A stretch of 64,000 bases of DNA from the NCBI GenBank assembly GCA_026770705.1, contig JANJGN010000121.1, positions 62,001-126,000 on the forward strand, written 5' to 3'. The position numbers were made by a program, and so were the translations under genes. The DNA comes from Isurus oxyrinchus (lineage: Eukaryota). Positions 2,698 to 53,100 of this stretch are shown piece by piece (position 1 is the stretch's first letter; every line of letters begins with the position of its first letter). The notes beneath the pieces are model-generated. The model had not been told where the DNA came from and made no database searches. It saw nothing but the letters and a program-made list of their open reading frames with translations.

Positions 2698-2946
2698 TCA
2701 GTTTTTCTGGAACCTGATCTGTGTGTATTCCGTGTCCTCGCTCCTGTGTACAGTCCTGTCACCGCTGGGCAGCTTTGAAAAGTTGATGTTGGCGTAGAGA
2801 AGCTCGTCGGTATTGTCGGGGTTCCCATGTCCAACATCGCCTCCCACTAGACCTTCAGAGAGACCCCGGGGAGCTGGGGTCTCCCCCTCGCTAGTTGTGT
2901 CTCTGGTTGTGTTCCGGGGCTCAGTAATCAGCACGTTCTGTTTACC
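2698..2946 (-). CDS. Gene 1 last exon: cytoplasmic tail with ITIM (LLYANI) and ITSM-like motif (TEYTQI)
   Basis: Acceptor tctctgtag|GGT AAA CAG; translation ...DELLYANINF...EDTEYTQIRFQKN*, the two-tyrosine layout of CD33-related Siglec tails. Confidence 0.9.
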   Translation of the reverse strand, partial: GKQNVLITEPRNTTRDTTSEGETPAPRGLSEGLVGGDVGHGNPDNTDELLYANINFSKLPSGDRTVHRSEDTEYTQIRFQKN

Positions 2947-5900
2947 CTACAGAGAAATGGAAACAGAAGACATCCTCACATCATTTACTGGCACTGATAG
3001 GGTTAAATTATTGTGCAGCCTCATTAGTGTCAGTCGTGTCTCAGTGGGTTTAAGCCTTTTTTTCACTCTCTTTCTCTGTCTCTCTTTCTCTCTCGTTTTC
3101 TCTCTCTCTTTATAATTTAATCTCTATCGCACTCCAACAGTGCAGCATTCCCTCAGTACTGACCCTCTGACAGTGCAGCACTCCCTCAGTACTGACCCTC
3201 TGACAGTGCTGCACTCCCTCAGAACTCACCTCTGACAGTGCAGCACTCCGTCAATACTGACCCTCTGGCAGTGCAGCACTCCCTCAGTACTGACACTCTG
3301 ACAGTGCAGCACTCCCTCAGTACTGACCCTCTGTCAGTGCAGCACTCCCTCAGTACTGACCCTCTGACAGTGCAGCACTCCCTCAGTACTGACCCTCTGA
3401 CAGTCCAACAATCCCTCAATACTGACCCTCTGACAGTGCAGCACTCCCTCAGTACTGACCCTCTGACAGTGCAGCACTCCCTCAGTACTGACCCTCTGAC
3501 AGTGCTGCACTCCCTCAGAACTCACCTCTGACAGTGCAGCACTCCGTCAATACTGACCCTCTGGCAGTGCAGCACTCCCTCAGTACTGACCCTCTGACAG
3601 TGCAGCACTCCCTCAGTACTGACCCTCTGACAGTGCAGCACTCCCTCAGTACTGACCCTCTGACAGTGCAGCACTCCCTCAGTACTGACCCTCTGACAGT
3701 CCAACAATCCCTCAATACTGACCCTCTGACAGTGCAGCACTCCCTCAGTACTGACCCTCTGACAGTGCAGCACTCCCTCAATACTGACCCTCTGACAGTG
3801 CAGCACTCCCTCATTACTGACCCTCTGACAGTGCAGCACTCCCTCAATACTGACCCTCTGGCAGTGCAGCACTCCCTCAATACTGACCCTCTGGCAGTGC
3901 AGCACTCCCTCAGTACTGACCCTCTGACAGTGCAGCACTCCCTCAATACTGACCCTCTGACAGTGCAGCACTCCCTCAGTACTGACCGTCTGACAGTCCA
4001 ACAATCCCTCAGTACTGACCCGCTGACAGTGCAGCACTTCCTCAGTACTGATCATCCGACAGTGCAGCACTCCCTCAGTACTGACCCTCCGACAGTGCAG
4101 CACTCCCTCAGTAATGACACTCTGACAGTGCACAACTCCCTCAGTACTGACCCTCCGACAGTGCAGCACTTCCTCAGTACTGACCCTCCGACAGTGCAGC
4201 ACTCCCTCAGTACTGACCCTCCGACAGTGCAGCACTCCCTCACTACTGACATCAGGTGCCTTGTCATTATTGTGTTCAGGTTTCTGGTCAAAGAGCGAGT
4301 GATGGAGGGTGACAGAGGCTGGGAGCGAGAGACAGTTCTGACCACTGAGCCATTGCTTCACAGGGAGATATCTATGTGTAACCCGGCTGGGAATCTGGGA
4401 CATGTGTTGTCTACACACTGAGGTTGAAGCTTTGAAGTGAGTGTAAACAGCTCCTGTACCTGGTGCTTCACAGAGAGTGACCTGGGGGTCAATGCAATGT
4501 CACTGGTCCCTGAAACTCTCTCCTGCGTCGCTGTCTTTCTCCTGCAATAACACAATATCATACTGTGGTTATCATATAGCAAAGAGTCAGTGCAGCACAG
4601 ACACAGAGCCCACTGTAACCTTACACCAACGACTGGACTGTCTCTAGTTCCAACAAGGGGTATCAGCGTGACATCACTATAATGGAAGTGTGACATGTGA
4701 TCCAATCTTAGTTTCACTTTTGCTTTGAGCAGAGCACACACTCACAGCTCTGATACCTTCAAGCTTTCTCCGTATGTATCACTGTTCTCGTGCCGAGTCT
4801 TGATAAACAAACCGACAACATTCTCACCCAATCCCTGTGAGCGATTGGTGCTTTGTTTCTTGTACAATAAATAAGCCTAAGGTATAATATCATTATAATG
4901 ACACGCCATATCTTTTACCCCCCCTCCACCCCTGCTCTTCCCCCCGTAGCCCTTCAAATGTTCCCCCTTCAAGTATTTATCCAATTCCCCTTTTGAAAGA
5001 TCCTATTGAATCTGCTTCCAGCGCCCTTTCAGGCAGCACCTTCCAGATCACAGCAACTGATTATTATTCATCTGGATAACGGGCAATGAAAAACACTGGA
5101 TCGTAAGGGATAAAGAGACCAGTTACGGAGAGGCATCTGGCGCTTAACACAAGGGAAACAATCACCGACTTCAGGAAAGAACATTGAAGCAAATGTTTAT
5201 ATTAAAATCAAGTTAAATCTTCAGACTTACTTTCTCACACAGATGAAGATGAAGATTCCAGCCAGGAAAACACTCAGCATGATCCCAGCCGTGAACAATC
5301 CTACTGTCCATTTACTGGAGTCTCTACCTGTAAAAACAGCCATTAATTACTGCACTACAGGTTTACAATGATGCTCCGATGTATCTCGAGAAGCGATACA
5401 CTCACTCAGTGTTTAAATACTCATTCTCGGGCAATGCTGACATTTATTGTCCATCCCTAGTTTCCCCTTGAGAAGGTGGTGGGGGGTCTTCCTCCTGAAC
5501 CACTGGTTTGTCCCAAACTGGGAGACCAGTTCAGAGGGCAGGTAAGAGTTAACCATGTTGGTGTCTGAGACTGGAGTCACATCCACACCGAGACATGCTT
5601 CCCTCCCTAAAGGGTATGTAGTGTCTACACATGTAACAACCAACCTCACTGAAATAATCGACTATCAGGTCATTATCACACGGTGGTTTGCGGGATCTTG
5701 CTGTGCACAAATCAGTACCTGTGTTTCCTACATTTCAACAGTGAGCTCACTTCGATAATGCTTCACTGGCTGTTGAATGTTTAGTAATTTCTAAGCAATT
5801 TATGAATACAAGTGTTGCATTTCAAAGTAATCCATGTAACATTTATATATAATATTTATCAATTAAAGAATGAGAAGTTCAGCAATTAAAAGGGTTGTTC

Positions 5901-7976: not shown

Positions 7977-10900
7977 TGTGTGAGAGTGATGTTGAAGTTT
8001 GCATTAACTCACATTCCACAGTGATGGTTATGAATCCCTCCACTGCTCCATGTTCATTCTCTGCCACACACTGATAGTCTCCAGTGTCCCTGGATGTAAC
8101 GTGAGGAATCACCAACCACAGCTCATTGTTGGAACTTGTTCTGTTCATTGGGACATTAAGATGTCGCCATGTCAGGTTAGAAGCTGGGAAGCTCTCGACA
8201 GAGCAGATTATCACTGCAGAATTCCCCTCAATTATATTGATCGATGAAGAGTTAATCATACCAAGAGAAGTAATTGAGAGATTCTGTGGTGCATCTAAAA
8301 ACAAATAAACATCAATTAACTTACACTGACTGTGAAACACTTTGAGAGACACTGAGAATGTGAAAGGTGTGATATCAATATAGGTTCTTTCACCACAAAG
8401 CCCATAATCCAGCCAGACACCTCAGTTCAGTACTGAGGGAGTGCTGCATTGTCGGAGGGTCAGTACTGAGGTAGTGCTGCACTGTCAGTGGATCAGTACT
8501 GAGGGAGTGTTGCACTGTCACAGATTCAGTACTGAGGGAGTGCTGCACTGTCGAAGGGTCAGTACTGAGGGAGTGCCGCACTGTCGAAGGGTCAGTACTG
8601 AGGGAGTGCTGCACTGTCAGTGGATCAGTACTGAGGGAGTGTTGCACTGTCAGAGGTTCAGTACTGAGAGACTGCTGCAGTGTCAGAGGTGAATTTGTAT
8701 CAGTTAAAGACGATTGATTTGTAGCTAAACACAATGAATTTGTGGGATCTTGCAGTGTACTATGTGGAGCTCTCTAGCTAATATAGAATGAAAGGTGTAT
8801 GTAATTACCTTGCACAGTTAGTACGAGGGTCCGCTCCGATGAAACAGATGGATATCTCACTCTGCAGCTGAGAGTGTGTCCGTGGTGTTTGAGTGATGGG
8901 AACAGGGTCAGAACAGAAGTATAGATCAGAGAGACACCATGCTGAGTTACAGTGTTTGAGACTGATCCAGGTACGTCAATGGGAGTGTCCCAGGTTAAGA
9001 CAGGTGCTGCTGTTCCATTGCACGTTGTGTTGAAGGTGCAGCTTACATCCACACGCTTTCCTGCAATAATTTCAGCAGGGAATATCGTGGTTTTATCTGT
9101 GAAATCTAACAGACAGAGAATGGATCCTTTTAGAGAAATATAACGTGAAGCATCAGTTCAAATAGAAATCACAGTCCCACAAGAGAAAGCACTTTTACAA
9201 GGATGATATCAGAACTGAGATGTTTTAACGATCCTGATAGACTGTTAGACACGATTAGAAAGATCGATGGGAGTGGAATACATTTAATCATTGATATTAA
9301 AGTGAGTATTAAAGGTTGCTTTAGGACTGAACTGGAAGCGATCACCAGGTTATTGAGAATCAGACAGTGTGTTATAATAAGCTGTGTTTTGTGTTAATAT
9401 GTAAACGTCACAGTTTGTGTTATTTCCCATCGAGTGTTGAATGTGAATTGTTGAGTAATTATAACACAGCACTTACCAGAAACGTGAAGCTGGGTTACAG
9501 GGTAATAGTTATGGCTCGGACCATTGTCAAATTCTATTCTGAAAAAATAAGGTTCTGCATCATCCCGTCTGATGTTGTTTATAATCAGGGAACAGTCGCC
9601 ATCTTTCAGGTCTCCAGACAGCCGGGTCCGATTGTGGAACCGTGGTAACTCGTGACTGTGATCCTTGGAGTGAAAGGCAATGGGAGCCCAGGGAATCTGT
9701 TTCTCATTATTAAACCAGACTCCACCTCGTTGTTGGTTTTCAAATTTTGCTGGATAACTGTAATGACATGGAATCTGTACACACGAACCTTCCTGCGCTG
9801 ACACCTCTCGTGGAGTGTCACCTTTCCACTCTTGTGACAGTCCAACTGGGGAGAGAAATCTCAATATTTAACTCTGGAAGGTTTGTAGATCCACTAGACT
9901 CGATATCCACCCCCTCCATCACTGGGGCACAGTGGCTGCAGTGTGGACCATCTGCAGGACACACAAGGAACTCCCCAAGGTTTCACAATGGATGGAAGTG
10001 AATCCTGGACACAGGAGTGGACAAGTTCATTCTACATTGGCTCATGGTCCTCAGGACCCTGTTTAATGAAGCCAGTCTTCCTCCCAACACAGTGTCTACA
10101 AGACACACCAATTGAGATCCATTCAGTGCTGATTTACAAGACAGGACAATGGATTAGGAGCCCTCAGAACTCCCCCCATTATCACCGTCATGAATCACTA
10201 ATTAGCCTAACATTCCTGTCTGCTCTTCAACACAGCTGATTGGCTAATCTGATTCAATCTGATTGGTGTTCATTCCCTCTTCAATGTTTAAGAAATCACC
10301 AATCACTCGGCCTCTAGTTATTCTCCTCCCCACAAGGGGAAATATTCTCTGTCTACCCAGTCAACTAAAAACTTTCCTCTGAACCTACCATCATACCCCT
10401 ATGTTCCTTTCTCCCTCATGTGTTAATCCAGGTTCCGTCTTAAATACATCAATACTATTCACCCCAGCCACTCCCTGTGGGAGCGAGTTCCACATTCTCC
10501 CCACTCTCTGGGTAAAGACGTTTCTCCGGAATTCCCCATTGGGTTTATCAGTGATGATCTCATATTGAGGGCCCCTAGTTCTCGTCTCCTCTCCCAACAA
10601 GAGGAAACACTCTCTCTGTATCCACTCCATCGAAACCTTTCTCAGTTTTAAACACCTGGATTAGGTCATCCCCTCAGCCTTGTCTCTTCTAGGGAAGAGA
10701 GACCCAGCCCGTCAGTCCTGTCCTCATATGTTTACCCCCACATTTCTGGGATCATCATTGTCAATCTTCTCTGCGCCCTCTCCAGTGTCTCTATATCCTT
10801 TTTATAACACGGTGACCAGAACTGCAGGCAGCACGGTCAATGTAGACTGACCAAGGTTCAATACAGGTTTTCCATCACTTCCCTGCTTTTCAATTCACTC

Positions 10901-39680: not shown

Positions 39681-40327
39681 TCTGAGTGTGGTCTGCACTG
39701 TCCTATGTGCATTCTAGGCACTGCCCAAGATTCCGCCTGATGTCTGTGTAACAACAACATCATGTACACATCGAGAATATTTCTTACTGTGTCTGTGCAG
39801 CAAGACAGCTTTGGAATGGCAACACCACTGGCAGGAATGTGAAACTACAATGTGACATGTTTACATTGGAAATTTCTATTATAAGGATGGGCACAGGAAT
39901 TTATATAATAGAGAAAATGTGACAACAAGAAGCTTTTCTTTGAGGCAAGAATCTGGCAGCAAAATAAGAATTTTAATCTATAAGTATCTACAGAACAGGC
40001 TGAGCATTTTAATCACTTGTGTTAATCAATGTAATTTTATTCATAACCCAAATGCTTCTTACAATCTATCACAGCATGAAAAAGGTGCAGCATTCAGAAA
40101 GCACATTCCAATCAGAGAACAGAGTTTAGCAACGTCACATTTCTGTTCATTCCTATTCGACCATGTTGGCTGCACACAGCCAGACAATGCCGTGGTTATG
40201 ATGTGTCCACACAGCAGGACTGGGGAGCACCAGGTATAAGGAAAAGTTTCAGCTTGCTGAGGAGAAGAAGGAGAATCTCTCGTTCCAGGTTACTCTCCGT
40301 ACATTAAGAAGCAGGCATGCCGATGTT

Positions 40328-40378
40328 TCATTGCACTCTGTCTGCTGATGGGAGTCCGCTTGGAAATTGCTGTTTGTG
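40328..40378 (-). CDS. Possible gene 3 terminal exon (HKQQFPSGLPSADRVQ*)
   Basis: Acceptor ttattctttccatcag|CAC, in phase 0 with the damaged donor AAA|ggaagt at 41044; followed by 3' sequence shared with genes 1 and 2. Confidence 0.4.
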   Translation of the reverse strand, partial: HKQQFPSGLPSADRVQ

Positions 40379-40391
40379 CTGATGGAAAGAA

Positions 40392-41003
40392 TAAGCTTTT
40401 CATAAATCGAGGGATTGAGTACAAACACAGGGAGGTTATGCTGAACATTTATAAAGCTCTGGTTAGGTCACAACTAGAGTATTGTGTCCAGTTCTGGTCT
40501 CCTCACTTTGGGAAGGAAGTGAGGGTCCTTGAGAGGTTAGGGAGGAGATTGAGCAGAATGGGTCCAGAGATGAGGGATTTTAGCTACAAGGTTGGGTTGG
40601 AGAAGCTGGGGTTGTTCTCCTTGGAGCAAAGGAGATTGAGGGGGGATCTGATCGAGGTGTACAAGATGATGATGCGTTTAGATCAGGTAGACAAAGAGAA
40701 GCTGTTGCCATTAGCTGATGGTACAAGGACTGGGGGACACAGATTGAAGGTTGTGGGCAGAGGGGGGATGTGAGGAGGAACTTTTTTACACAGCGAGTGG
40801 TAATGAGCTGGAACTCGCTGCCTACGAGGATGGTGGCAGCGGAGACGATGAACGATTTCAAAAGGAAATTGGACGGACACTTGAGGGGAAATAAACTTGA
40901 AGGGCTACGGGGATAGAGCGGGGGAATGGGACTGACTGTATTGCTCTACAGAGAGACAGCATGGAGTCGATGGGCTGAATACCGTCCTTCTGTTCCGTAA
41001 TAA
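40392..41003 (+). mobile_element. CR1 LINE 3' fragment, antisense to and just 3' of the gene 3 TM exon
   Basis: YKALVRSQLEYCVQFWSPH...LEKLGLFSLEQRRLRGDLIEVYK. Confidence 0.85.
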
Positions 41004-41023
41004 GATTGTTGCTGCACAAAGCT

Positions 41024-41163
41024 TCAAACAGTCTGTCGACTTCCTTTCACTGTTTGTCTCTCCCAGACACAGACTCCAGCGATAGTGATAACCACAGCCA
41101 CAAGGAATATCACAGCTCGTATTCCCAGGATCAGGATCACGTGCAGAATCTCTCCTCCACTGT
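41024..41163 (-). CDS. Gene 3 TM/tail exon (SGGEILHVILILGIRAVIFLVAVVITIAGVCVWERQTVKGSRQTV*)
   Basis: Acceptor ttctgtgtgttctctag|AC, phase 1; hydrophobic helix containing Arg; no Tyr; this frame is absent from the ORF track. Confidence 0.8.
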
Positions 41164-44100
41164 CTAGAGAACACACAGAAAGAAATCATCACTGACTCTC
41201 CGCTTTCAATCTCTCACTCTGGCTGAACAATCAAGCTTCATATCACTGCAACATTTGCTGTAATATTGACCCATCCACTGGGATTCAATGTGGAATGAAT
41301 GTTTTCATTGTAAACACTCTAAGAGTGGACAATCGGAACTTTCCCCTTAGCGTGGAACATTGGTGCGAATGGATCATTGTGCTGTTGGACTCCCTGTCCA
41401 ATGTTTCTCTCCATCGCTGTGTACAGGATTGTGCTGTAGAAAATTCTGGAAACGTTTAGTGCCGGGTGGAAATCCATCTCGGACGCGTGTGCGAATCGGG
41501 CAGGATCGAGATGGACTCCCCCACGGACTTACACCCCCCGCTTAATAAACAGTTCCAATCTTTACCCAGAGAGAGGGGAGAATGTGGAACTCGCTCCCAC
41601 AGGGAGTGGTTGAAGTGAGTAGTAGCAAATTGGGAAGTGAAATTGCTTGAAAAGCTGGGAGATGCAAGGGTTAAGTGCTACCATGCCACCACTGGTGGCA
41701 GAGTGTAACTGCAGCGTGACGTTTACATAGGCAATCCCCATTATGAACTTGGACATTGGACATCATGTGCAAAATGGGCTCTGGAAAGGTGAGAACATGA
41801 TGTAAGCTTTTCACCAACAGAAATTCCTTCATAAACCTCTCCATCTCTCTCTTACTGTCAGATACTCAAACAACATTTCACACAGAATTACATAAGGAGG
41901 AGTTGGGACAGGTGACTGGTCAAAGGGTTAGGTTTCAGGAAGCTTTTTAAAGGAGGATAGAGAGTTAGAGAGGCAGAGAGTATCTGTGAGAAACTCTGTG
42001 CATCTGGGTGTCTAATAGACTTTGCAATTTCCGCGTTCTTCCATAAACTTGAAAGGGAATACAACTCCCAGAATCCATGTCAACTCTCCGGTGCAGCACT
42101 GAGGGAGGTCAGGTAACCCACGGGGGAGAATGTGTTAGTGTGTTTGTTTGTGAGTGTGTCCTTTTGTGTGCTCATACATGTGGGATTGTGTGTCTGCACG
42201 TGTCTATTTAGGTTTGTATATTTGTGTGTGTTTGTGTAGTGTTTGAATCTGAGAGAGCTGTTGAAGTCTTTGTACACTCACGTTCCACAGTGATGGTTAT
42301 GAAACCCTCCACTGCTCCATGTTCATTCTCTGCCACACACTGATAGTCTCCAGTGTCCCTGGATGTAACATGAGGAATCACGAACCACAGCTCATTGTTG
42401 GAACTTGTTCTGTTCATTGTGATATTCAGATGTCAGGGCAGGACTCAATATGACAGATCACAGGTTTACCAACAGGAAGTGAACAACAATTTATATTTAA
42501 TGGGAAGAGAGTGCTGATTGATTGGCAAGTGGTCTCTGATTGGAGGAGGTGTTGCCATGGAAAATAATGTGTGCGAGCTGTAAAGTTTTGGCAGATTGTC
42601 TCTTCATTCAGCAATAATCATATAAAGATCAGTTAACTTCTATCGACTGTGAAGCACTTTGAGAGGTCTGAGAATGTGGATACTGAGAACGGGCTGCACT
42701 GTCAGAGGGTCAGCGCTGAGGGAGTGCTGATGTAGAATGAAGGGTGTCCGTTCTTACCTTGCACAGTTAGTACGAGGGTACGCTCCGATGAAACAGATGG
42801 ATATCTCACTCTGCAGCTGAGAGTGTGTCCGTGGTGTTTGAGTGATGGGATCAGGGTCAGAACAGAAGTATAGGACAGAGTGACACCATGCTGAGTTACA
42901 GTGTTTGAGACTGATCCAGGTACGTCAGTGGGAGTGTCCCAGGTTAAGACAGATGCTGCTGTTCCATTGCACGTTGTGTTGAAGGTGCAGCTTACATCCA
43001 CACGCTTTCCTGCAATAATTTCAGCAGGGAATATCGTGGGTTTATCTGTGAAATCTAACAGAGAGGGAATGGATCCTTTTAGAGAAATATAACGTGAAGC
43101 ATCAGTTCAAATAGAAATCACAGTCCCACAAGAGAAAGCACTTTTACAAGAATGATATCAGAACTGAGAGGTTACAATGATCAGGATAGAATTTCCTGCT
43201 TAGAGACTTTGGTGTTTCTGTCTCTCAGCTTAATACACGTTCACTCCGAGACACTTGAACTGATAATAGTGGGTGAGGGTGGAGGAGCAGACCAGAGTTT
43301 GGAGTGCACTACCCCATCATTCACTCAGCGATCTGGGCCATTTATTACTTTGCAATTTGTGGGAGCTTGCTGTGTGCAAATTGGCTGCTGTGTTTCTCAC
43401 ATTATAACAGTAAATACAATTCAGGAATCAGCTCATTGGCTGTGAAGTGATTTTGTAATTGCTGAGGTGGTGAAAGGCCCTATAGAATTGGACAGAATTC
43501 GAGAGATCGATGGGAGTGGATAACCTGATAACATTGATGGACACAGTCAATATACTTAATCATTGATATTAAAGTGAGTATTAGAGGTTGCTTTAGGACT
43601 GAACTGGAAGCTATCATCAGGTTATTGAGAATCAGACAGTGTGTTATAATATGCTGTGTTTTGTGTTAATATGTAAACATCACAGATTGTGTTATTTCCC
43701 ATTGAGTGTTGAACGTGAATTGTTGAGTAATTATAACACAGCACTTACCAGAAACGTGAAGCTGGGTTACAGGGTAATAGTTATGGCTCGGACCATTGTC
43801 AAATTCTAGTCTGAAAAAATAAGGTCCTGCATCTCCCCATCTGATATTGTTTATAATCAGGGAACAGTCGCCATCTTTCAGGTCTCCAGACAGCCGGGAC
43901 CGATGGCGGAACCGTGGTAACTCGTGACTGTGATCCTTGGAGTGAAAGGCAATGGGAGCCCAGGGAATCTGTTTCTCATTATTAAACCAGACTCCACCTC
44001 GCGGTTGGTTTTCCAGAAACGATGGATAACTGTAATGACATGCAATCTGTACACACGAACCTTCCTGAGCTGTCACCTCTCGTGGAGTGTCACCTTTCCA

Positions 44101-47100
44101 CTCTTGTGACAGTCCAACTGGGGAGAGAAATCTCAATATTTATCTCTGGATGGTTTGTGGATCCACGAGACTCAAAATTTACAGATGAGGCTGAATTGGG
44201 GGGATGGTCAATACTGAGGAGAATGGCAACAAATTATTTTGGCAGGAAGAATAGAAAAACAGAATATTATTTAAATGGAGATAGGCTGCAGAATGCAGTA
44301 CAGAGGGATCTGGGTGTCCTTGTACATGAATCACAGAAAGTCAGCATTCAGGAACACCACGGAATGAGGAAGGCAAGTGGAATGTTGGCCTTTATTGCAA
44401 AGGGATGGAGTATAAAAGGAGGGAAGTCTTGCAACAGCTGCACAGGGCGTTAGTGAGATTGTAACAGGATCATTGTGTACAGGCAGTTCAGAGAAGCTAC
44501 ACTGGACTGATTCCTGGGATTAAAGGGTTTGTCCTGTGAGGAAATGTTGAGCAGGTTGGGCCTGTATCCATTGGAGTTTAGAAGAATGAGGGGTGACCTT
44601 ATTGAAACATATCCGATTCCGAGGGGGCTTGACAGGGTGGATGCTGGGAGAATGTTTCCCCCTCGTGGGGGAATCTAGAACCAGGGAGCACAGTTTCGGA
44701 ATGAGGACTCTCCCATTTAAGACTGAGATGAGGAGGAATTTCCTCTCTCAGAGGGGCGCTAGCCTGTGGAATTCTCTTCCCCAGAGAGCAGTGGAGGCTG
44801 GGCCATTGAATAGACTCAAGGCTGAGTGAGGCAGGTTTTTGATCGACAAGGGAGTCAAGGGTTTGGGAGACAGGCAGGAAAATGGAGTTAAGGCAACAAC
44901 CAGATCAGTGAGAGCAGGCTCGAGGGGCCGAATGGCATTCTCCTGTCCCTATTTCTTATGTTCTTACATTCTTACCATCTTAAAATATTAAAGCTGCAGA
45001 ATAAACATGCAAGTGACTGACCCGCTCGACCCACCTTCCATCTGGGGGTCCCATGGGGAGGACCCTTCCTGAGCCAGATCCACCAGCCAACATGGTCTGG
45101 ATCCGAGCACAGGAGACACTGGGGGGAGTGACTAACAGGCTCCTTGTGACAGGCCCCGTCTGTCCAATGGCTGGCTTTCAGCTGCCAAGGCCAGAGTGGT
45201 CCTTGCTAAAACCGGCTCAGGACAGGCCAGGACCCCTGTGCAGACCCCCTCCAGCGCTGCAGCCTCTGTACAAACCCCTCATGCGCTTGTGGAGAGACAC
45301 AAACAAGGCTGCACATTACCGAGGAGAATCCCCTCTATGGACTAAGGGGCTGACTCATCACCTTAAACTCAGCAAATGAGGAGGCTCTCGTTCGGTATCG
45401 GGGCTTGGCATTCGCTCAATAAAAATAATCAAATGACATTTTGGTCAGAAATCTAAGGAGGTTGTACATTCCCTCAAAAATAAGACTCGATCTGGGGTCG
45501 AGGGTCAAAGGGCAACAACTTATATTTTCACAACAACTTTAACATGACAAATCACTCCAAGGTGCTACACAGGAGCGTCATAAAACAAAGTATGTCACCC
45601 AGACACATGTGGAGATATTAGCGACAGCTGGCCAGAAGAGGTCGGTGTTATGGAAAGACAGAGAGAAAGAGACAGAGAAACACAGCGAGAGAGAGAGAGG
45701 GAGAGGGAGAGGGAGAGGGAGAGGGAGAGGTTTAGGGTGGGAACACTAGGGTGGTGAAAGGCGCTGTAGAAATTTAAATCTTTTTTCTGTCGATATGTCA
45801 GACTTCAAGACAGGATTTGAGAGATTGATGGGAGTGGATAAACTGATAACATTGATAGACACAGTCAACACATTTAATCATTGATATTAAAGTGAGTATT
45901 AGACATTGCTTTAGGACTGAACTGGAAGCTATCACCAGGTTATTGAGAATCAGACAGTGTGTTATAATAAGCTGTGTTTTGTGTTAATATGTAAACATCA
46001 CAGTTTGTGTTATTTCCCATTGAGTGTTGAATGTGAATTGTTGAGTAATTATAACACAGCACTTACCAGAAACGTGAAGCTGGGTTACAGGATAATAGTT
46101 ATGGCTCGGACCATTGTCAAATTCTATTCTGAAAAAATAAGGTCCTGCATCTTCCCGTCTGATGTTGTTTATAATCAGGGAACAGTCGCCATCTTTCAGG
46201 TCTCCAGACAGCCGGGTCCGATGGCGGAACCGTGGTAACTCGTGACTGTGATCCTTGGAGTGAAAGGCAATGGGAGCCCAGGGAATCTGTTTCTCATTAT
46301 TAAACCAGACTCCACCTCGCGGTTGGTTTTCCAGACACGATGGATAACTGTAATGACATGGAATCTGTACACACGAGCCTTCCTGAGCTGTCACCTCTCG
46401 TGGAGTGTCACCTTTCCACTCTTGTGACAGTCCAACTGGGGAGAGAAATCTCAATATTTATCTCTGGATGGCTTGTGGATCCACTAGACTCAAAATTTAC
46501 AGATGAGGCTGAATTGGGGGGATGGTCAATACTGAGGAGAATGGCAACAAATTATTTTGGCAGGAAGAATAGAAAATCAGAATATTATTTAACTGGAGAC
46601 AGGCTGCAGAATGCAGTACAGAGGGATCTGGGTGTCCTTGAACATGAATCACAGAAAGTCAGCATTCAGGAACAACACGGAATGAGGAAGGCAAGTGGAA
46701 TGTTGGCCTTCATTGCAAAGGGATGGAGTATAAAAGGAGGGAAGTCTTGCAACAGCTGCACAGGGCGTTAGTGAGATTTTAACAGGATCATTGTGTGCAG
46801 GCAGTTCAGAGAAGCTACACTGGGCTGATTCCTGGGATTAAAGGGTTTGTCCTGTGAGGAAATGTTGAGCAGGTTGGGCCTGTATCCATTGGAGTTTAGA
46901 AGAATGAGGGGTGACCTTACTGAAACATATCCGATTCCGAGGGGGCTTGACAGGGTGGATGCTGGGAGGATGTTTCCCCCTCGTGGGGGAATCTAGAACC
47001 AGGGAGCACAGTTTTGGAATGAGTGCTCTCCCATTTAAGACTGAGATGAGGAGGAATTTCCTCTCTCAGAGGGGCGCTAGCCTGTGGAATTCTCTTCCCC

Positions 47101-50100
47101 AGAGAGCAGTGGAGGCTGGGCCATTGAATAGACTCAAGGCTGAGTGAGGCAGGTTTTTGATCGACAAGGGAGTCAAGGGTTTGGGGGACAGGCAGGAAAA
47201 TGGAGTTAAGGCAACAACCAGATCAGTGAGAGCATGCTCGAGGGGCCGAATGGCCTGCTCCTGTCCCTGTTTCTTATGTTCCTACATTCTTACCATCTTA
47301 AAATATTAAAGCTGCAGAATAAACATGCAAGTGACTGACCCGCTCGACCCACCTTCCATCTGGGGGTCCCATGGGGAGGACCCTTCCTGAGCCAGATCCA
47401 CCAGCCAACATGGTCTGGATCCGAGCACAGGAGACACGGGGGGGAGTGACTGACAGGCTCCTTGTGACAGGCCCCGTCTGTCCAATGGCTGGCTTTCAGC
47501 TGCCAAGGCCAGAGTGGTCCTTGCTAAAACCGGCTCAGGACAGGCCAGGACCCCTGTGCAGACCCCCTCCAGCGCTGCAGCCTCTGTACAAACCCCTCAT
47601 GCGCTTGTGGAGAGACACAAACAAGGCTGCACATTACCGAGGAGAATCCCCTCTACAGACTAAGGTGCTGACTCATCACCCTAAACTCAGCAAATGAGGA
47701 GGCTCTCGCTCGGTATCGGGGCTTGGCATTCGCTCAATAAAAATAATCAAATGACATTTTGGTCAGAAATCTAAGGAGGTTGTACATTCCCTCAAAAATA
47801 AGACTCGATCTGGGGTCGAGAGTCAAAGGGCAACAACTTATATTTTGACAACAACTTTAACATGACAAATCGCCCCAAGGTGCTACACAGGAGCGTCATA
47901 AAACAAAGTATGTCACCCAGACACGTGTAGATATTAGCGACAGCTGACCAGAAGAGGTCGGTGTTATGGAGAGACAGAGAGAAAGAGACAGAGAGAGAGA
48001 GAGAGGGAGAGGAAGAGGGAGAGGGAGAGATTTAGGGTAGGAACTCTAGGGTGGTGAAAGGCGCTGTAGAAATGTAAATCTTTCTTCTGTCGATATGTCA
48101 GACTTCAAGACAGGATTTGAGAGATTGATGGGAGTGGATAAACTGATAACATTGATAGACACAGTCAACACATTTAATCATTGATATTAAAGTGAGTATT
48201 AGACATTGCTTTAGGACTGAACTGGAAGCTATCATCAGGTTATTGAGAATCAGACAGTGTGTTATAATAACCTGTGTTTTGTGTTAATATGTAAACATCA
48301 CAGTTTGTGTTATTTCCCCTTGAGTGTTGAATGTGAATTGTTGAGTAATTATAACACAGCACTTACCAGAAATGTGAAGCTGGGTTGCAGGATAGTAGCT
48401 GTAACTATTACTGTTGTCAAATTCTATTCTGAAAAAATAAGGTCCTGCATCTTCCCGTCTGATGTTGTTTATAATCAGGGAACAGTCGCCATCTTTCAGG
48501 TCTCCAGACAGCCGGGTCCAATGGTGGAACCGTGGTAACTCGTGACTGTGATCCTTGGAGTGAAAGGCAATGGGAGCCCAGGGAATCTGTTCCTGATTAT
48601 TAAACCAGAGTCCACCTCGCGGTTGGTTTTCCAGACACGATGGATAACTGTAATGACATGGAATCTGTACACAGGAACCTTCCTGCGCTGTCACCTCTCG
48701 TGGAGTGTCACATTTCCACTCTTGTGACAGTCCAACTGGGGATAGAAATCTCAATATTTATCTCTGGATGGTTTGTGGATCCACTAGACTCAAAATTTAC
48801 AGATGAGGCTGAATTGGGGGGATGGTCAATACTGAGGAGAATGGCAACAAATTATTTTGGCAGGAAGAATAGAAAATCAGAATATTATTTAACTGGAGAC
48901 AGGCTGCAGAATGCAGTACAGAGGGATCTGGGTGTCCTTGTACATGAATCACAGAAAGTCAGCATTCAGGAAAACCACGGAATGAGGAAGGCAAGTGGAA
49001 TGTTGGCCTTTATTGCAAAGGGATGGAGTATAAAAGGAGGGAAGTCTTGCAACAGCTGCACAGGGCGTTAGTGAGATTTTAACAGGATCATTGTGTACAG
49101 GCAGTTCAGAGAAGCTTCATTGGGCTGATTCCTGGGATTAAAGGGTTTGTCCTGTGAGGAAATGTTGAGCAGGTTGGGCCTGTATCCATTGGAGTTTAGA
49201 AGAATGAGGGGTGATCTTATTGAAACATATCCGATTCCGAGGGAGCTTGACAGGGTGGATGCTGGGAGGATGTTTCCCCCTCGTGGGGGAATCTTGAACC
49301 AGGGAGCACAGTTTCGGAATGAGGGCTCCCCCATTTAAGACTGAGATGAGGAGGAATTTCCTCTCTCAGAGGGACGCTAGCCTGTGGAATTCTCTTCCCC
49401 AGACAGCAGTGGAGGCTGGGCCATTGAATAGACTCAAGGCTGAGTGAGGCATGTTTTTGATCAACAAGGGAGTCAAGGGTTTGGGGGACAGGCAGGAAAA
49501 TGGAGTTAAGGCCACAACCAGATCAGCGAGGGCAGGCTCGAGGGGCCGAATGGCCTTCTGCTGTCCCAATTTCTTATGTTCCTACATTCTTACCTTCTTA
49601 AAATATTAAAGCTGCAGAATAAACATGCAAGTGACTGACCCGCTCGACCCACCTTCCATCTGGGGTTCCCATGGGGAGGACCCTTCCTGAGCCAGATCCA
49701 CCAGTCAACATGGTCTGGATCCGAGCACAGGAGACACGGTGGGGAGTGACTAACAGGCTCCTTGTGACAGGCCCTGTCTGTCCAATGGCTGACTTTCAGC
49801 TGCCAAGGCCAGAGTGGTCCTTGCTAAAACCGGCTCAGGACAGGCCAGGACCCCTGTGCAGACCCCCTCCAGCGCTGCAGCCTCTGTACAAATCCCTCAT
49901 GCGCTTGTGGAGAGACACATACAAGGCTGTACATTACCGAGGAGAATCCCCTCTACGGACTAAGGGGCTGACTCATCACCTTAAACTCAGCAAATGAGGA
50001 GGCTCTCGCTCGGTATCGGGGCTTGGCATTCGCTCAATAAAAATAATCAAATGACACTTTGGTCAGAAATCTAAGCAGGTTGTACATTCCCTCAAAAATA

Positions 50101-53100
50101 AGACTCAATCTGGGGTCGAGGGTCAAAGGGCAACAACTTATATTTTCACAACAACTTTAACATGACAAATCACCCCAAGGTGCTACACAGGAGCGTCATA
50201 AAACAAAGTATGTCACGCAGACACATGTGGAGATATTAGCGACAGCTGACCAGAAGGGATCGGTGTTATGGAGAAACTTAAAAGAGGGATGAAATGGTTA
50301 GTGAGAGAGAGAGAGTGAGTGTGAGGGATGGAGAGGGCTTAAGGGAGGGTATTACGGAGCTCGGTCCCCAGGCAGCTGAAGGCATGGCCACCGATGTTAG
50401 AGTGTTGAGATCGGGGGATGGTCAAGAGGCTGGAATTGGAGGAGCGCAGAGACCTCTGAAGGTTGGTGGGTCTGGAGGAGGTTACAGAGATAGGGAGGGT
50501 TGTAGGGGCTGGAGGAGGTTACAGAGATAGCGAGGTTTGTAGTGATTGGATGAGTTATAGCGATAGGGAGGTTTTTAGGGGCTGGAAAAGTTAAGAGAGA
50601 TTGGGAGAGTGTAGGGTCTGGAGGAGTTTGCAGAGGTCGGGAGGGTTGTAGTGACTGGGGCAGGTTACAGGGGCAGGGAAAGTTGTCGGGACTGGAGCAG
50701 GCTACAGAGATAGGGAAGCTTTTAGGGGCAGGAGGAAGTTACAGAAATAGGGAGGGTTGTAGTGGCTGGAGGAGGTTGCAGAGATTGGTAGGTTTGTTGG
50801 GCAGGATGAATTTACAGATATAGGGAAGCGGTAGAGGCTTGAAGAGGTTACAGAGAATGGGATGGTTGTAGGTACTGGAGGAGGACGAGGAGATTACAGG
50901 GATAATGAGGAAACAAAGATGAAAATTTGGACATTGAGACTTTGCTTGACCAGGAGCCAGTCTCGGTCATCGAGCAGAGCGGGTGATAAGGGAACGGGAC
51001 TTGGTGTGAGTAAGGACGTGGTCAGCAGTTTTGGATGGCCTCAAGTTTATGGAGTGTAGAGCGTGTGTTGGAACAGTCGAGACTGGAGGTAATGAAGGCG
51101 TGGATGAGGGTTTCAGCAGCAGATGAGCTGAGACAGAGTGATGTCGTGCGATGTTAAGGAGGTGGAAATAGACGGTGTTAGTGAGGGCGCAGATATGAGG
51201 CCGGAAGCTCATCTCAGGATCAAATAGGACAACAAAGCTGTGAACAGATTGGCTTCAATCTCAGAGAGCAGCCAGGGAGAGGAATGGAGTTGGTAGCGAG
51301 GGAACAGAGTTTGGAGCGGGGAATGAAGACAATGGCTTCAGTCTTTCCAATATTTAATTGGAGGGAATTTCTGCCCATCCAGTACTGGATGTCGGATAAG
51401 CAGCCTGATAATTTAGCAGCAGTGGAGGAGTCGAGAGAGGTGGTGGTGAGGTAGAGCTGGGGATCCTCAGTGGACAGGTGAAAACTAACACTGTTCAGAT
51501 GATGCTGCAAAGCCATTGCAAGTGATTCTCTGGCTACGATGAGATGGATAAGAATGGAGCCAGGGGAGAGCAGTCCCACCCAGCTGGACGACAGTGGAGA
51601 GGTGTTGGAGGAGGATGGTGTCGTCGAGCGTGTCAAAGGCTGCAGACAGATCGAGAAGGACGAGGAGGGAAAGTTGACCTTTGTCACAGTCACACAGGAT
51701 GCCATTTGTGACGTTGATAAGAGCTGTTTCAGCATAGTGGCTGGGGTGGGAACCTGATTGGAGGGATTCAAACATGGAGTTGCGGGAAAGATGGGGACGG
51801 ATTCGGGAGATGGAAACACGTTCAAGGACTTTGGAGGGGAAAGAGAGGCTGGAGATGGGACGGGGGTTTACACGGACAGTGTGAGGGGTGAAAGGTGTAG
51901 TGAGGAGGAGACACTTCACTCAGGGGGGAAGTGTCATCACCCCTCAGCTCGGTTTATGTTACAGCTATGATGTGGATTCAATCACACACAATAAGCTCAT
52001 GGATCTGGGAGCAGAAATAGACAAATCATTAAAAATAGTGACGCTGGTTAACATGGCCAAAAAACAAGCAAATCAAACACTATTATTTCCCATTGAGTGT
52101 TGGATGTGAATTGTTGAGTAATTATAACACAGCACTTACCAGAAACCTGAAGCTGGGTTTCAGGGTAATAGTTATGGCTCGGACCATTGTCAAATTCTAT
52201 TCTGAAAAAATAAGGTGCTTCATCTTCCCGTCTGATGTTGTTTATAATCAGGGAACAGTCGCCATCTTTCAGGTCTCCAGACAGCCGGGTCCAATGGTGG
52301 AACCGTGGTAACTCGTGACTGTGATCCTTGGAGTGAAAGGCTATAGACCATTTAGACCATTTGTTCTGTATGTACCTCCTCATATACCAGATTCCGACAT
52401 GTGTTTTCTTTACCAAATGTGATGAGTAACTGTAATGACATGGAATCTGTACACATGAACCTTCCTGCGCTGTCATCTCTCGGGGACTGTCACCTTTCCA
52501 CTCTTGTGACAGTCCAACTGGGGAGAGAAATATCAATATTAAACTCTGGATGGTTTGTAGATCCACTAGACTCGATATCCACCCCCTCCATCACTGGGGC
52601 ACAGTGGCTGCAGTTTGGACCATCTACAGGACACACAAGGAACTCCACAAGGTATCACAATGGATGGAAGAGAATCCTGGACACAGGAGTGGGCAAGTTC
52701 ATTCTACATTGGCTGATGGTGCTCAGGACCCTGTTTGTGCACAAGCCTGCTATCCAACAGAACTGATGTTGGGGAAAATCCATTTGGAATTCCACTGTCC
52801 AGGGCATTGTGTTAACTTGCTGAGTTTGTTTTAAATCTAACATCTATTTTTGGTCTGTTGCCTTAAAGGGAGTGTAACTGGGAGTCAGGTTAATTAGGAA
52901 TTTTAGGAGTTATTATAGCAGTCATTGTAGTCTTATGTATGTGCTTAAAATCTTTTATTTTGATGACAAATATTTTAATTTATTTTTTTAAATCTCTAAA
53001 GGTCTTGGTGTAATTATTGCTTCTGAATTCAGTGCACACATCTCATAATAAATACAAATTGCAAAATCATTATGATCGTGTGACCACCTTTCTCTCATGG

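What the first reader, a model, noticed from the sequence alone, without database searches (positions are those of the whole stretch)
41024..41163. Hidden Arg-containing TM exon: gene 3 looks like the activating partner of a paired-receptor system
Seen: a phase-1 exon missed by the ORF track encodes ILHVILILGIRAVIFLVAVVITIAGVCVW plus a short Tyr-free tail. It is unrelated to the neutral TM of genes 1 and 2, while V and D2 are nearly identical across all three genes. Established: a basic TM residue recruits ITAM adaptors (Arg in LILRA, GPVI and OSCAR with FcR-gamma; Siglec-14/15/16 with DAP12). Siglec-5/14 and 11/16 are paired receptors homogenised by gene conversion. Inference: a paired Siglec-like system in a cartilaginous fish, possibly evolved independently.
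Basis: partly seen in the sequence, partly recalled or inferred. Interest (0 to 1): 0.8.

Follow-up and report, generated by a model that had tools for sequence, protein, structure and literature searches.

The report
Shark Siglec gene's arginine membrane-anchor exon
A small exon in a shark Siglec-type immune receptor gene is real and spliced as predicted, giving an arginine-bearing membrane anchor of the "activating" kind next to inhibitory twins, though automatic shark gene annotations already contain it.

Summary
Observation confirmed. On the minus strand, 41163..41024 reads (D)SGGEILHVILILGIRAVIFLVAVVITIAGVCVWERQTVKGSRQTV-stop. It has an AG acceptor in phase 1 that fits the D2 donor at 42758.

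- **RNA:** the exact joint 42758>41163 (GT..AG) lies in one contig in each of 4 of 4 runs laid, from 2 samples and 2 studies.
- **Public annotation:** great white shark RefSeq models carry the same ...LTVQDSGGEILHV... junction.
- **Conservation:** 17 of 17 copies of this anchor (the window plus 16 proteins from 8 named shark species) keep ILGIRA with the Arg. All but one chimeric model have a short Tyr-free tail. The exon also ends CD22-like and SLAM-like receptors.
- **Inhibitory neighbours:** genes 1 and 2 have a neutral membrane span and an LLYANI / TEYTQI tail.
- **Concerted evolution or repeated cassette capture:** V and D2 are 94-97% identical in DNA, but the 3' ends only 73-86%. V and D2 trees reject a single clade of activating forms.

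So the paired-receptor reading is supported structurally. Adaptor coupling is inferred, not shown. This scan noted the same design on at least 8 other pieces of this genome. I found no paper on it in sharks. Verdict: new member of a known kind.

The parts
41024..41163 (-). Coding part of the terminal exon of gene 3. It encodes a stalk (DSGGE), a membrane span with Arg (ILHVILILGIRAVIFLVAVVITIAGVCVW), a 12-residue Tyr-free tail and a TGA stop. The exon runs on as 3' UTR below 41024.
   Evidence: The joint to 42758 is in 4 of 4 runs. 16 database proteins carry the same cassette.
42758..43054 (-). D2 (C2-set) exon of gene 3, phase 1 at both ends.
   Evidence: Pfam C2-set_2, E 6.3e-8. Joints 43054<>43749 and 41163<>42758.
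43749..44116 (-). Proximal V-set (Siglec-type) exon of gene 3 (Va).
   Evidence: Pfam V-set and Ig_CD22. Best PDB hit is Siglec-7, E 3.2e-15. Joint to D2 in 4 of 4 runs.
42274..42434 (-). Relic of a third Ig (I-set type) exon. Only the 3' half is present (NRTSSNNELWFVIPHVTSRDTGDYQCVAENEHGAVEGFITITVE). The donor is intact, but there is no 5' half and no in-frame acceptor.
   Evidence: 95% identical to 6137-6297 and 32344-32504. Sequence. Pfam I-set positions 51-90 of 90 only. Contigs laid there carry paralogue letters at 42370 and 42382 in all 4 runs.
40380..41002 (.). LINE-like fragment in the 3' UTR (reverse-transcriptase-like ORF on the + strand, 40348-40773), starting 21 nt below the stop codon. 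One X3 contig skips it with non-canonical ends, and an X2 contig also breaks at 41003.
   Evidence: ORF. Joint 40379>41003 (TG..TA) in 1 of 4 runs, and record 12 of X2. No Pfam hit for the ORF, so 'LINE' rests on my reading of the peptide.
40016..40233 (-). 3'-UTR-like segment homologous to the DNA just below the tail exons of genes 1 and 2. AATAAA lies at 40041-40036.
   Evidence: 80.4% identical to 2505-2672 and 73-79% to 23449-23682. Sequence.
5231..5327 (-). Neutral TM exon of gene 1, the inhibitory type.
   Evidence: 95.9% identical to the gene 2 TM exon.
28537..28633 (-). Neutral TM exon of gene 2.
2698..2934 (-). Tail exon of gene 1 with LLYANI (ITIM) and TEYTQI (ITSM-like).
   Evidence: ORF. 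Same tail as great white shark P0076...LLYTNINFSKL...TEYAQIRFQKN.
24325..24561 (-). Tail exon of gene 2 with LLYANT (degenerate ITIM, Thr at +3) and TEYAQI.
   Evidence: ORF. 86.4% identical to the gene 1 tail exon.
8810..9828 (-). D2 (8810-9103) and V (9478-9828) coding parts of gene 1.
34793..36298 (-). D2 (34793-35086) and V (35948-36298) coding parts of gene 2.
46068..52500 (-). Three further V-set exons upstream of Va (46068-46418, 48368-48718, 52141-52500). They may feed the same D2-TM end.
Evidence: 97.4, 92.0 and 84.2% identical to Va. 2.3-kb repeat units.

Best explanation
Gene 3 is a transcribed Siglec-type receptor gene. Its last coding exon (41163..41024, minus strand) is spliced directly to the D2 exon. 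It supplies a type-I membrane anchor with one conserved arginine in the outer third of the span and a short tail without signalling tyrosines.

The most likely working is that of an activating partner. The ectodomain is about 90-95% identical to that of the linked ITIM-bearing genes 1 and 2, so it should see similar sialylated ligands. The buried Arg would pair with the two aspartates of a dimeric ITAM adaptor. By its position and its being Arg, an FcR-gamma/zeta-type adaptor is favoured, and a DAP12/DAP10 type is possible. The adaptor would be needed for surface expression and would signal through Syk-family kinases.

**Shown:** the exon, the splice, the conservation, the linkage to inhibitory twins, and the identity step along the genes.

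**Inferred:** ligand sharing, the adaptor, and the sign of the signal.

The anchor is a conserved terminal exon that sharks attach to several IgSF ectodomain families. Gene 3 looks built on an inhibitory-type gene frame, because it keeps a relic third-domain exon and a homologous 3' UTR. Its V-D2 part was later kept alike with its neighbours by gene conversion or re-duplication.
For: - **Sequence and phase:**
- **Splice:** the joint 41163<>42758 (skips 1594, CT..AC on + = GT..AG on -) is in 1 contig in each of 4 of 4 runs. X1-X3 are one sample and X5 is another organism label and study. The V>D2 joint is also in 4 of 4.
- **Topology:** acidic DSGGE lies before the span and net +2 (ERQTVKGSR) after it. 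The Kyte-Doolittle score of 2.95 is the highest on the strand.
- **Conservation:** phmmer of the 45-aa exon against 1.84 billion representatives gave 10 proteins at E <= 1e-3. Nine carry the cassette, 8 of them at the very C-terminus.
- **Invariants:** with later searches, 17 of 17 copies (the window plus 16 proteins) keep ILGIRA.IF...CV. Sixteen of 17 have 22-30 residues after the Arg and no Tyr.
- **Species:** Scyliorhinus torazame and canicula, Carcharodon, Chiloscyllium punctatum and plagiosum, Hemiscyllium, Rhincodon, Mustelus.
- **Same junction in public models:** P0018, P0019, P0021 (Carcharodon), P0001 and P0012.
- **Inhibitory neighbours:**
- **Identity step, gene 3 vs gene 1:** V 94.0%, D2 97.3%, V-D2 intron 93-95%, D3 relic 95%, but the 3' UTR only 80%.
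- **Trees:** activating-type D2 (9 of 30 rows) and V (16 of 36 rows) are not one clade (p-AU 0.0009 and 0.008). S. canicula activating P0013 and inhibitory P0022 have sister V domains (100/99).
- **Assembly rule:** Arg in the top half of the span goes with zeta/gamma, and a central Lys with DAP12 (passages of PMC13107469).
Against: - No adaptor, surface-expression or signalling data exist. I could not inspect shark adaptor sequences.
- The runs are labelled RNA only by guess, and all evidence is from assembled contigs. The shorter side of the joint is 28, 31, 22 and 28 letters, so only X2 reaches the tool's 31-letter bridging rule. Three of the four runs are one sample. The table of the joined form in DNA runs was not given, so a processed DNA copy is not formally excluded.
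- Contigs that run unspliced from the exon into the upstream intron (41111-41618) are present in 4 of 4 runs.
- Gene 3 shows wear: a truncated third-domain exon and a LINE fragment 21 nt behind the stop.
- Mammalian activating Siglecs use DAP12, so the gamma/zeta guess rests on position alone.
- dN/dS between the V copies is unremarkable (0.19-1.2, small counts).
- No protein marked as encoded by this window appeared, so I saw no annotation of this very gene.
Confidence: 0.7

Rival explanations
1. Non-signalling decoy or ligand sink. The short-tailed form sits in the membrane (or is retained and degraded because of its Arg) and merely competes with the inhibitory Siglecs for ligands or pathogens, without an ITAM adaptor.
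For: The tail has no motif. No adaptor was tested. Paired-receptor theory allows decoys (passages of PMC13358205).
Against: An Arg kept in 17 of 17 copies across three shark orders and several ectodomain families, inside an otherwise variable hydrophobic span, is hard to explain without a partner. By the review's account, a buried unpaired Arg is costly and causes retention.
Confidence: 0.13
2. The Arg couples to a non-ITAM or unconventional partner (a DAP10-like YxxM adaptor, or a shark-specific acidic-TM protein). The output would then be co-stimulatory or even inhibitory rather than classically activating.
For: A central Arg pairs NKG2D with DAP10. Siglec-15 binds DAP10 and DAP12 (passage of PMC7226832). 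Earlier notes of this scan list unusual ITAM-bearing proteins in this genome (unchecked).
Against: The Arg lies in the outer third, not the centre. By the review's rule, that position goes with zeta/gamma.
Confidence: 0.12
3. Decaying gene. It is transcribed and spliced but makes no useful protein. The exon is a leftover, and the RNA signal comes from a paralogue elsewhere in the genome.
For: There is a truncated D3 exon, a LINE insert in the 3' UTR and unspliced contigs. V and D2 contigs cannot be told from paralogues at 95% likeness. One X2 contig (record 13) has 9 differences in 508 letters and departs from the window at 41618.
Against: All coding exons seen are open. The splice sites are canonical. 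The TM exon is unique in the window. It is identical over the 28-residue core to Carcharodon P0021. The relic exon is simply skipped, as the joint shows.
Confidence: 0.05

Closest known systems
Human paired Siglecs: Siglec-5/Siglec-14 and Siglec-11/Siglec-16
   Same: These are closely linked genes whose first two Ig domains are kept nearly identical. One partner has an ITIM plus a second tyrosine motif. The other has a basic residue in the membrane span and a short tail. Gene conversion is invoked for the pairs (passages of PMC13358205; abstract of PMC4042635 in the listing).
   Different: The shark anchor is a separate terminal exon with no detectable likeness to the inhibitory partner's TM exon. 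It is shared with non-Siglec-V receptors. Gene 3 has several V exons and a relic third-domain exon. The adaptor is unknown, and the Arg lies in the outer third. I did not compare it with mammalian Siglec-14/16 sequences, because none came from a tool.
Automatic RefSeq models in sharks: Carcharodon carcharias 'sialic acid-binding Ig-like lectin 12' (P0018, P0019) and 'myeloid cell surface antigen CD33-like' (P0021); Scyliorhinus canicula 'Siglec-14 isoform X2' (P0013) and 'Siglec-13' (P0012); S. torazame XP_072325011.1 (P0001)
   Same: They have the same V-D2-anchor build and the same ...VQ/DSGGE... junction. The TM core is 96-100% (Carcharodon) and 82% (Scyliorhinus) identical to the window.
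   Different: They are other genes or species. The window differs from P0018 by 2 residues in the exon. The names are given by similarity only. I found no paper that describes them.
Receptors that assemble with FcR-gamma / CD3-zeta through an Arg in the upper half of the span (CD89, NKp46, NKp30, TCR-alpha)
   Same: There is a single Arg in the outer part of a type-I span and a short tail without motifs (passages of PMC13107469).
   Different: There is no sequence relationship. The PDB search with the exon gave 0 hits at E <= 10. Association is untested.
Fish multigene activating/inhibitory IgSF families (skate and zebrafish MDIR, teleost NITR, LITR)
   Same: They are families of activating and inhibitory receptors in cartilaginous and bony fish. 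The stimulatory forms carry a positively charged TM residue and a short tail (passages of PMC3031540).
   Different: Their ectodomains are CD300/TREM/pIgR-like or KIR-like, not Siglec-type. No sequence comparison was made here.

Membership tests
Siglec (sialic-acid-binding Ig-like lectin) family | N-terminal V-set domain of the Siglec type | tested here: met
   Pfam V-set (E 1.8e-10) and Ig_CD22 (E 1.6e-7), both above their cut-offs. The 17 best PDB sequences are all Siglecs: Siglec-7, -5, -8, CD33, -10, MAG, sialoadhesin.
Siglec (sialic-acid-binding Ig-like lectin) family | Conserved arginine of the sialic-acid site on the F strand | tested here: met
   YFFRLE of the window aligns with YFFRME of Siglec-7 and YFFRVE of Siglec-5 (alignments). 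That this Arg is the ligand-binding one is recalled, not from a call.
Siglec (sialic-acid-binding Ig-like lectin) family | V-set domain followed by C2-set domain(s) | tested here: met
   The D2 exon matches C2-set_2, E 6.3e-8. The V>D2 joint is in 4 of 4 runs.
Siglec (sialic-acid-binding Ig-like lectin) family | Binds sialylated glycans | not testable with these tools
   Needs glycan arrays with a recombinant V-D2.
CD33-related Siglec subgroup (orthology with the mammalian cluster) | Orthology or synteny with the mammalian CD33-related cluster | not tested
   Only hints exist. The best PDB hits are CD33-related members, and the tail of genes 1/2 has an ITIM plus a second TxYxxI motif. The RefSeq names are automatic. 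Bony fish are said to lack this subgroup (passages of PMC7226832).
Activating member of a paired receptor system | Basic residue inside the predicted membrane span | tested here: met
   There is one Arg in the span: the 8th residue of the stretch VILILGIR..., or the 12th of the 29-residue stretch. It is invariant in 17 of 17 copies.
Activating member of a paired receptor system | Short cytoplasmic tail without tyrosine motifs | tested here: met
   The tail is 12 residues, ERQTVKGSRQTV, with no Tyr. 16 of 17 copies have 22-30 residues after the Arg. The exception is the chimeric model P0010.
Activating member of a paired receptor system | Linked inhibitory partner with a near-identical ectodomain and ITIM | tested here: met
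   Genes 1 and 2 lie in the same window and on the same strand. V is 94.0-95.4% and D2 96.6-97.3% identical in DNA. The tails carry LLYANI / TEYTQI.
Activating member of a paired receptor system | The anchor exon is actually used in mRNA | tested here: met
   The joint 41163<>42758 is in 4 of 4 runs (2 samples). Caveats on contigs and run labels apply.
Activating member of a paired receptor system | Physical and functional association with an ITAM adaptor through the basic residue | not testable with these tools
   Earlier notes of this scan report an FcR-gamma gene in this genome (s1-863553). I did not check it.
Activating member of a paired receptor system | Ectodomain homogenised with the partner (gene conversion) | tested here: inconclusive
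   There is an identity step from 93-97% (V, D2, intron, relic) to 73-80% (3' UTR). The trees group by lineage, not by type. Repeated capture of the cassette by new duplicates would give the same picture. No formal conversion test was run.

The most novel reading that the evidence does not exclude
Galeomorph sharks own one portable 'activation exon'. This is a terminal exon encoding ...ILGIRA.IF...CV... plus a short tail, and it is attached to quite different IgSF ectodomains. These include Siglec-type V-C2, multi-V Siglecs, CD22-like chains of I-set domains, a lone CD22-type V domain and SLAM-like receptors.

The exon would be spread and kept alike within each genome by exon shuffling and gene conversion, so that many receptor families are wired to one adaptor. 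In the bamboo shark, the copies on 'Siglec-13' and 'CD22-like' proteins are 96% identical in the core. The Siglec copies of catsharks are only 75-78% like them.

Mammalian paired receptors are, as far as I recall, usually made family by family through changes in the family's own TM exon.
Probability: 0.4. Interest if true: 0.6.

Novelty: new member of a known kind. Interest (0 to 1): 0.42.

Why it matters
The fish Siglec paper I read covers teleosts only (it mentions no sharks). [quoted passage not shown] The reviews and papers I read illustrate paired Siglecs with human examples.

This window, with its RNA-supported junction, shows that a lamniform shark has linked inhibitory and activating-type Siglec genes. 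They show the same signature of an ectodomain kept alike beside a divergent signalling end.

That moves the paired-Siglec design, or an independent invention of it, to cartilaginous fish. It also gives a concrete construct (V-D2-anchor, Arg to Ala) to test which ITAM adaptor the oldest jawed vertebrates used.

The wider point is that the same anchor exon serves several receptor families. This would make it a handle for finding all activating receptors of a shark genome by one motif.

Tried and rejected
- **** translated the wrong frame. I corrected this.
- **** failed because one of four references held stop codons (my coordinates). I corrected them after reading the sequence and ran the search again.
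- **Pfam on the TM exon** gave only sub-threshold noise (DNER_C, SPAR).
- **The PDB sequence search with the exon** gave 0 hits at E <= 10.
- **The RT-like ORF 40348-40770** has no Pfam hit. 'LINE' is therefore my reading of the peptide.
- **A stingray short-tailed Siglec with an Arg in its span** (P0094, Hypanus sabinus) looked similar by eye. It scored E 5.6 against a profile of the cassette, so I do not claim the cassette outside sharks.
- **P0008** (678 aa, 10 short stretches, 47% identity) was set aside as a repetitive chance match.
- **The word-based searches on the TM region** found little: 3 of 5 and 2 of 11 candidates.
- **I considered that the D3 relic might be an exon of gene 3.** I rejected this because it lacks its 5' half and any in-frame acceptor, the contigs there carry paralogue letters, and the D2>TM joint skips it.
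- **I considered the 623-nt skip 40379>41003 as an intron.** I rejected this because its ends are TA..CA on the gene's strand and it appears in 1 of 4 runs only. An insertion difference between individuals or species fits better.
- **Adaptors:** the two searches aimed at adaptors brought no paper on shark DAP12 or FcR-gamma.
- **Shark or skate paired receptors and fish Siglecs:** five further searches brought none that describes activating or paired Siglecs in cartilaginous fish. The whale shark genome paper mentions Siglecs once, in a list. Its Supplementary file 9 may hold more, and I did not ask for supplements.
Full report
**What is in the sequence.**
- Read on the minus strand, the window has ...tttctgtgtgttctctag|AC AGT GGA GGA GAG ATT CTG CAC... 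from 41163 downwards. In the frame set by a phase-1 junction this gives SGGEILHVILILGIRAVIFLVAVVITIAGVCVWERQTVKGSRQTV and then TGA at 41026-41024.
- The D2 exon of the same gene ends ...CTA ACT GTG CAA G|gtaagaac at 42758.
- The mechanical ORF is only 50 aa, which explains why a long-ORF list does not show it.
- The stretch is the most hydrophobic 19-residue window of all three minus-strand frames of the 64 kb (2.95). Six stretches reach 2.2, and two of the others are the TM exons of genes 1 and 2.
- Acidic residues precede the span and net-positive ones follow it, which fits a type-I anchor.
- The exon's DNA is unique in the window.

**RNA.**
- The look-up of sequencing runs listed 22 runs. 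None holds half of the 3.3-kb stretch. X1-X4 (one sample, 'organism A') hold 0.20-0.39 of the words.
- I laid X1, X2 and X3 (one sample) and X5 (another organism label, sample and study) on 40300-44300.
- In 4 of 4 runs one contig joins 41163 to 42758, skipping 1594 letters with CT..AC ends on the + strand. This is GT..AG for a minus-strand gene, at exactly the predicted bases.
- In 4 of 4 runs the V exon is joined to D2 (43749 to 43054).
- **Limits:**
  - The runs are 'RNA' by guess and the data are contigs.
  - The shorter side of the D2-TM joint is 28, 31, 22 and 28 letters, so only X2 meets the tool's 31-letter rule.
  - The table of the joined form in DNA runs was not given.
- Against a simple picture, all four runs also hold contigs that run unspliced from the exon into the upstream intron as far as 41462-41618 (records 3, 13, 18, 30). 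There they stop at a repeat shared with 10453-10518. This may be pre-mRNA, retained intron or DNA carry-over.
- Contigs over the relic exon (42274-42434) carry other letters at 42370 and 42382 in every run. They therefore come from paralogous third-domain exons, not from gene 3.

**Anatomy of gene 3 and its neighbours.**
- Gene 3 has the following parts (minus strand):
  - V exon Va, 44116-43749;
  - D2, 43054-42758;
  - one unit of the 33-bp intron satellite, 42681-42729;
  - the 3' half of a third-domain exon with an intact donor but no 5' half, 42434-42274 (95% to the third-domain exons of genes 1 and 2);
  - the anchor exon;
  - a 623-bp LINE-like fragment, 40380-41002, which one X3 contig skips with non-canonical ends and at which an X2 contig breaks;
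  - a segment, 40016-40233, that is 80% like the DNA just below the tail exon of gene 1 and 73-79% like that of gene 2, followed by AATAAA at 40041-40036.
- Three more V exons lie upstream. Here I saw only a contig end that shows a V-to-V splice of some paralogue (loose end at 44109 in X2) and Carcharodon models with a partial V plus a V.
- Genes 1 and 2 on the same strand have a neutral TM exon (5231-5327 and 28537-28633).
- Their tail exons end ...LLYANINFSKL...TEYTQIRFQKN (gene 1) and ...LLYANTQVF...TEYAQISFKRN (gene 2). Gene 1 thus has a canonical ITIM plus a TxYxxI motif. In gene 2 the first motif is degenerate.

**The ectodomain is Siglec-type.** The V exon hits Pfam V-set and Ig_CD22 above threshold, and D2 hits C2-set_2. 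The 17 best solved-structure sequences are all Siglecs, led by Siglec-7 (E 3.2e-15), with YFFRLE aligned to YFFRME.

**The anchor exon elsewhere.**
- A 45-aa query cannot reach full-length proteins through the length-limited word search, so I spent the one exhaustive search on it.
- That search gave 10 proteins at E <= 1e-3 among 1.84 billion representatives. Nine carry the cassette, 8 of them as their last residues. P0010 has it internally in what looks like a chimeric model, and P0008 was set aside.
- The names given by NCBI are:
  - 'CD33-like' and 'Siglec-12' (Scyliorhinus torazame);
  - 'Siglec-13' and 'B-cell receptor CD22-like' (Chiloscyllium punctatum);
  - 'CD22-like' (Hemiscyllium ocellatum);
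  - 'sialoadhesin-like' (Rhincodon typus);
  - a hypothetical protein (S. torazame);
  - 'SLAM family member 9-like' (Mustelus asterias).
- Further searches added S. canicula 'Siglec-13' and 'Siglec-14 isoform X2', a 987-aa S. torazame protein and three Carcharodon carcharias models among 94 relatives of 512 candidates.
- P0018, P0019 and P0021 of Carcharodon read ...TLVLTVQDSGGEILHVI(Q/L)ILGIRAVIFLVAVVITIAGVCVWEGQT.... This is the window's junction, and P0021 is identical to the window over the 28-residue core.
- Across the window and 16 proteins, ILGIRA.IF and CV are invariant (17 of 17). Sixteen have 22-30 residues after the Arg and none of those tails has Tyr.
- Pfam shows that the ectodomains differ. 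P0004 and P0005 have 4-8 Ig_2/I-set domains and no Siglec V. P0006 has a lone CD22-type V. P0007 and P0009 have an I-set/Ig_3 domain. P0014 has six V-set stretches.
- Core identity groups by taxon: lamniforms 96-100%, catsharks 85-100%, and orectolobiforms 89-100% across 'Siglec-13', 'CD22-like' and 'sialoadhesin-like'. The SLAM-like copies stand apart, at 50-71% to the others and 75% to each other.

**Paired and kept alike.**
- Between gene 3 and gene 1:
  - V exon 94.0%;
  - D2 97.3%;
  - alignable V-D2 intron 93-95%;
  - relic 95%;
  - 3'-UTR-like segment 80%.
- Between the two inhibitory genes:
  - V about 95.4% (16 differences in 351 nt);
  - D2 95.9% (12 differences in 294 nt);
  - TM exon 95.9%;
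  - tail exon 86.4%;
  - 3' UTR 73%.
- In a D2 tree (30 rows; poorly resolved, 4 of 26 inner branches starred) the activating label needs 7 changes, no fewer than shuffled labels (mean 8.1). Forcing the 9 activating rows into one clade is rejected (delta lnL 60, p-AU 0.0009). The lamniform rows plus the window fall on one side of a weakly supported branch.
- In a V tree (36 rows) one clade for the 16 activating rows is rejected (p-AU 0.008). S. canicula activating P0013 and inhibitory P0022 are sisters (100/99). The window's three genes mix with Carcharodon activating and Cetorhinus inhibitory V domains in starred clades.
- I dropped rows before these trees. Proteins typed neither activating nor neutral-TM by my regular expressions were left out (68 of 104, mostly models without a recognisable TM). 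Batoids were left out of the V tree.
- The anchor exon and the ITIM-type tail are each shared between lamniforms and catsharks, while V and D2 group by lineage. Either the ectodomain exons are homogenised within genomes, or new duplicates repeatedly capture the anchor exon. I cannot tell which.
- dN/dS between V copies is 0.19-1.2 on small counts and proves nothing.

**How it most likely works.**
- Shown: a spliced mRNA encodes Siglec V-C2 domains on an anchor with one invariant outer-third Arg and a motif-free tail. It lies next to ITIM-bearing twins.
- From established knowledge as given in the Chem Rev 2026 review (passages), a basic TM residue docks onto the paired aspartates of a dimeric signalling module. 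[quoted passage not shown] Unassembled chains are retained.
- The review also says that Arg in the top half of the span goes with zeta/gamma, whereas DAP12 partners use a central Lys and NKG2D-DAP10 a central Arg.
- Inference: gene 3 couples to an FcR-gamma/zeta-type adaptor and delivers the opposite signal to genes 1 and 2 on similar ligands.
- Earlier notes of this scan report an FcR-gamma gene in this genome (s1-863553, s1-869613). I did not check them.

**Known or new.**
- The reviews and papers I saw illustrate paired Siglecs with human examples (passages of PMC13358205; listing).
- A fish Siglec paper states that only Siglec1, CD22, MAG and Siglec15 are regularly present in fish and that fish genomes lack CD33-related Siglecs. 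It does not mention sharks (abstract in the listing, passages).
- Activating/inhibitory IgSF families as such are known in skate (MDIR; passages of PMC3031540).
- Seven literature searches found no paper on activating or paired Siglecs of cartilaginous fish.
- The gene models, however, sit in RefSeq for at least eight shark species. This scan has already noted the same design on at least 8 other pieces of this genome, 7 of them followed up with the same verdict.
- This exon is therefore a new member of a known kind. The part that goes beyond earlier notes is the anatomy of gene 3 (relic exon, homologous 3' UTR, identity step) and the use of one anchor exon by several receptor families.

**Limits.**
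- The window's exons were handled apart and never joined for a search, fold or tree.
- No supplements were read.
The closest proteins are from Carcharodon carcharias.

Noticed in passing
window 3238-4421, 8390-8734, 24574-25315, 37943-39769, 60218-60682; one unit at 42681-42729: There are long arrays of a 33-bp tandem repeat that reads as ...LSTDPLTVQHS... in one frame. They lie in or beside introns of all three Siglec genes and on both strands of the ORF list. Gene 3 keeps only one unit between D2 and the relic exon.
   Followed up: partly
window 43491-45000 vs 45809-47318 and 48109-49618: A tandem unit of about 2.3 kb carries a V exon plus a repeat-derived ORF. Copies are 97% and 95% identical.
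   Followed up: no
window 40379/41003: One X3 contig joins 40379 to 41003 with non-canonical ends, and an X2 contig breaks at 41003. The LINE-like fragment 40380-41002 may be absent from the 3' UTR in the sampled animal.
   Followed up: partly
window 41111-41618: Contigs in all four runs continue unspliced from the anchor exon into about 450 nt of the upstream intron. They end at a short repeat also found at 10453-10518. Depth drops to near zero from 41640 to 42175. A start inside the intron or a retained intron is possible.
   Followed up: no
window 44109 and 44119 (loose ends): Contig ends at the Va acceptor show two upstream partners. One is the end of another V exon followed by a start that reads AEPSQEW (not the window's VGLSQEW, so a paralogue). 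The other is an exon reading ...ILLPPVTSP, like the N-terminus of Carcharodon P0076.
   Followed up: partly
window 41027-41035: The protein ends ...RQTV. S. canicula models end ...RRTV. A C-terminal T-x-V fits the class I PDZ-binding pattern as I recall it. Orectolobiform models end ...KGS instead, so it is not universal.
   Followed up: no
window 24325-24561: Gene 2's membrane-proximal motif is LLYANT (Thr at +3), which is not a canonical ITIM. Gene 1 has LLYANI. Gene 2 may be a weakened inhibitor.
   Followed up: no
window 23953-24137 and 33048-33307: There are two runs of N (185 and 260 bases) inside gene 2, one below its tail exon and one among its third-domain exons. I left them untouched, so the domain count of gene 2 is uncertain.
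   Followed up: no
window 52048-52566: The most distal V exon sits in an ORF that begins with ATG and a leader-like MDLQTIQSLILIFLSPVGLSQ directly in frame. This is unlike the other V exons.
   Followed up: no
P0094 (Hypanus sabinus): A stingray short-tailed Siglec has an Arg in its span (...LAVRGVLFLL...). It is not significantly like the shark cassette (E 5.6). It may be a separate activating anchor in rays.
   Followed up: partly
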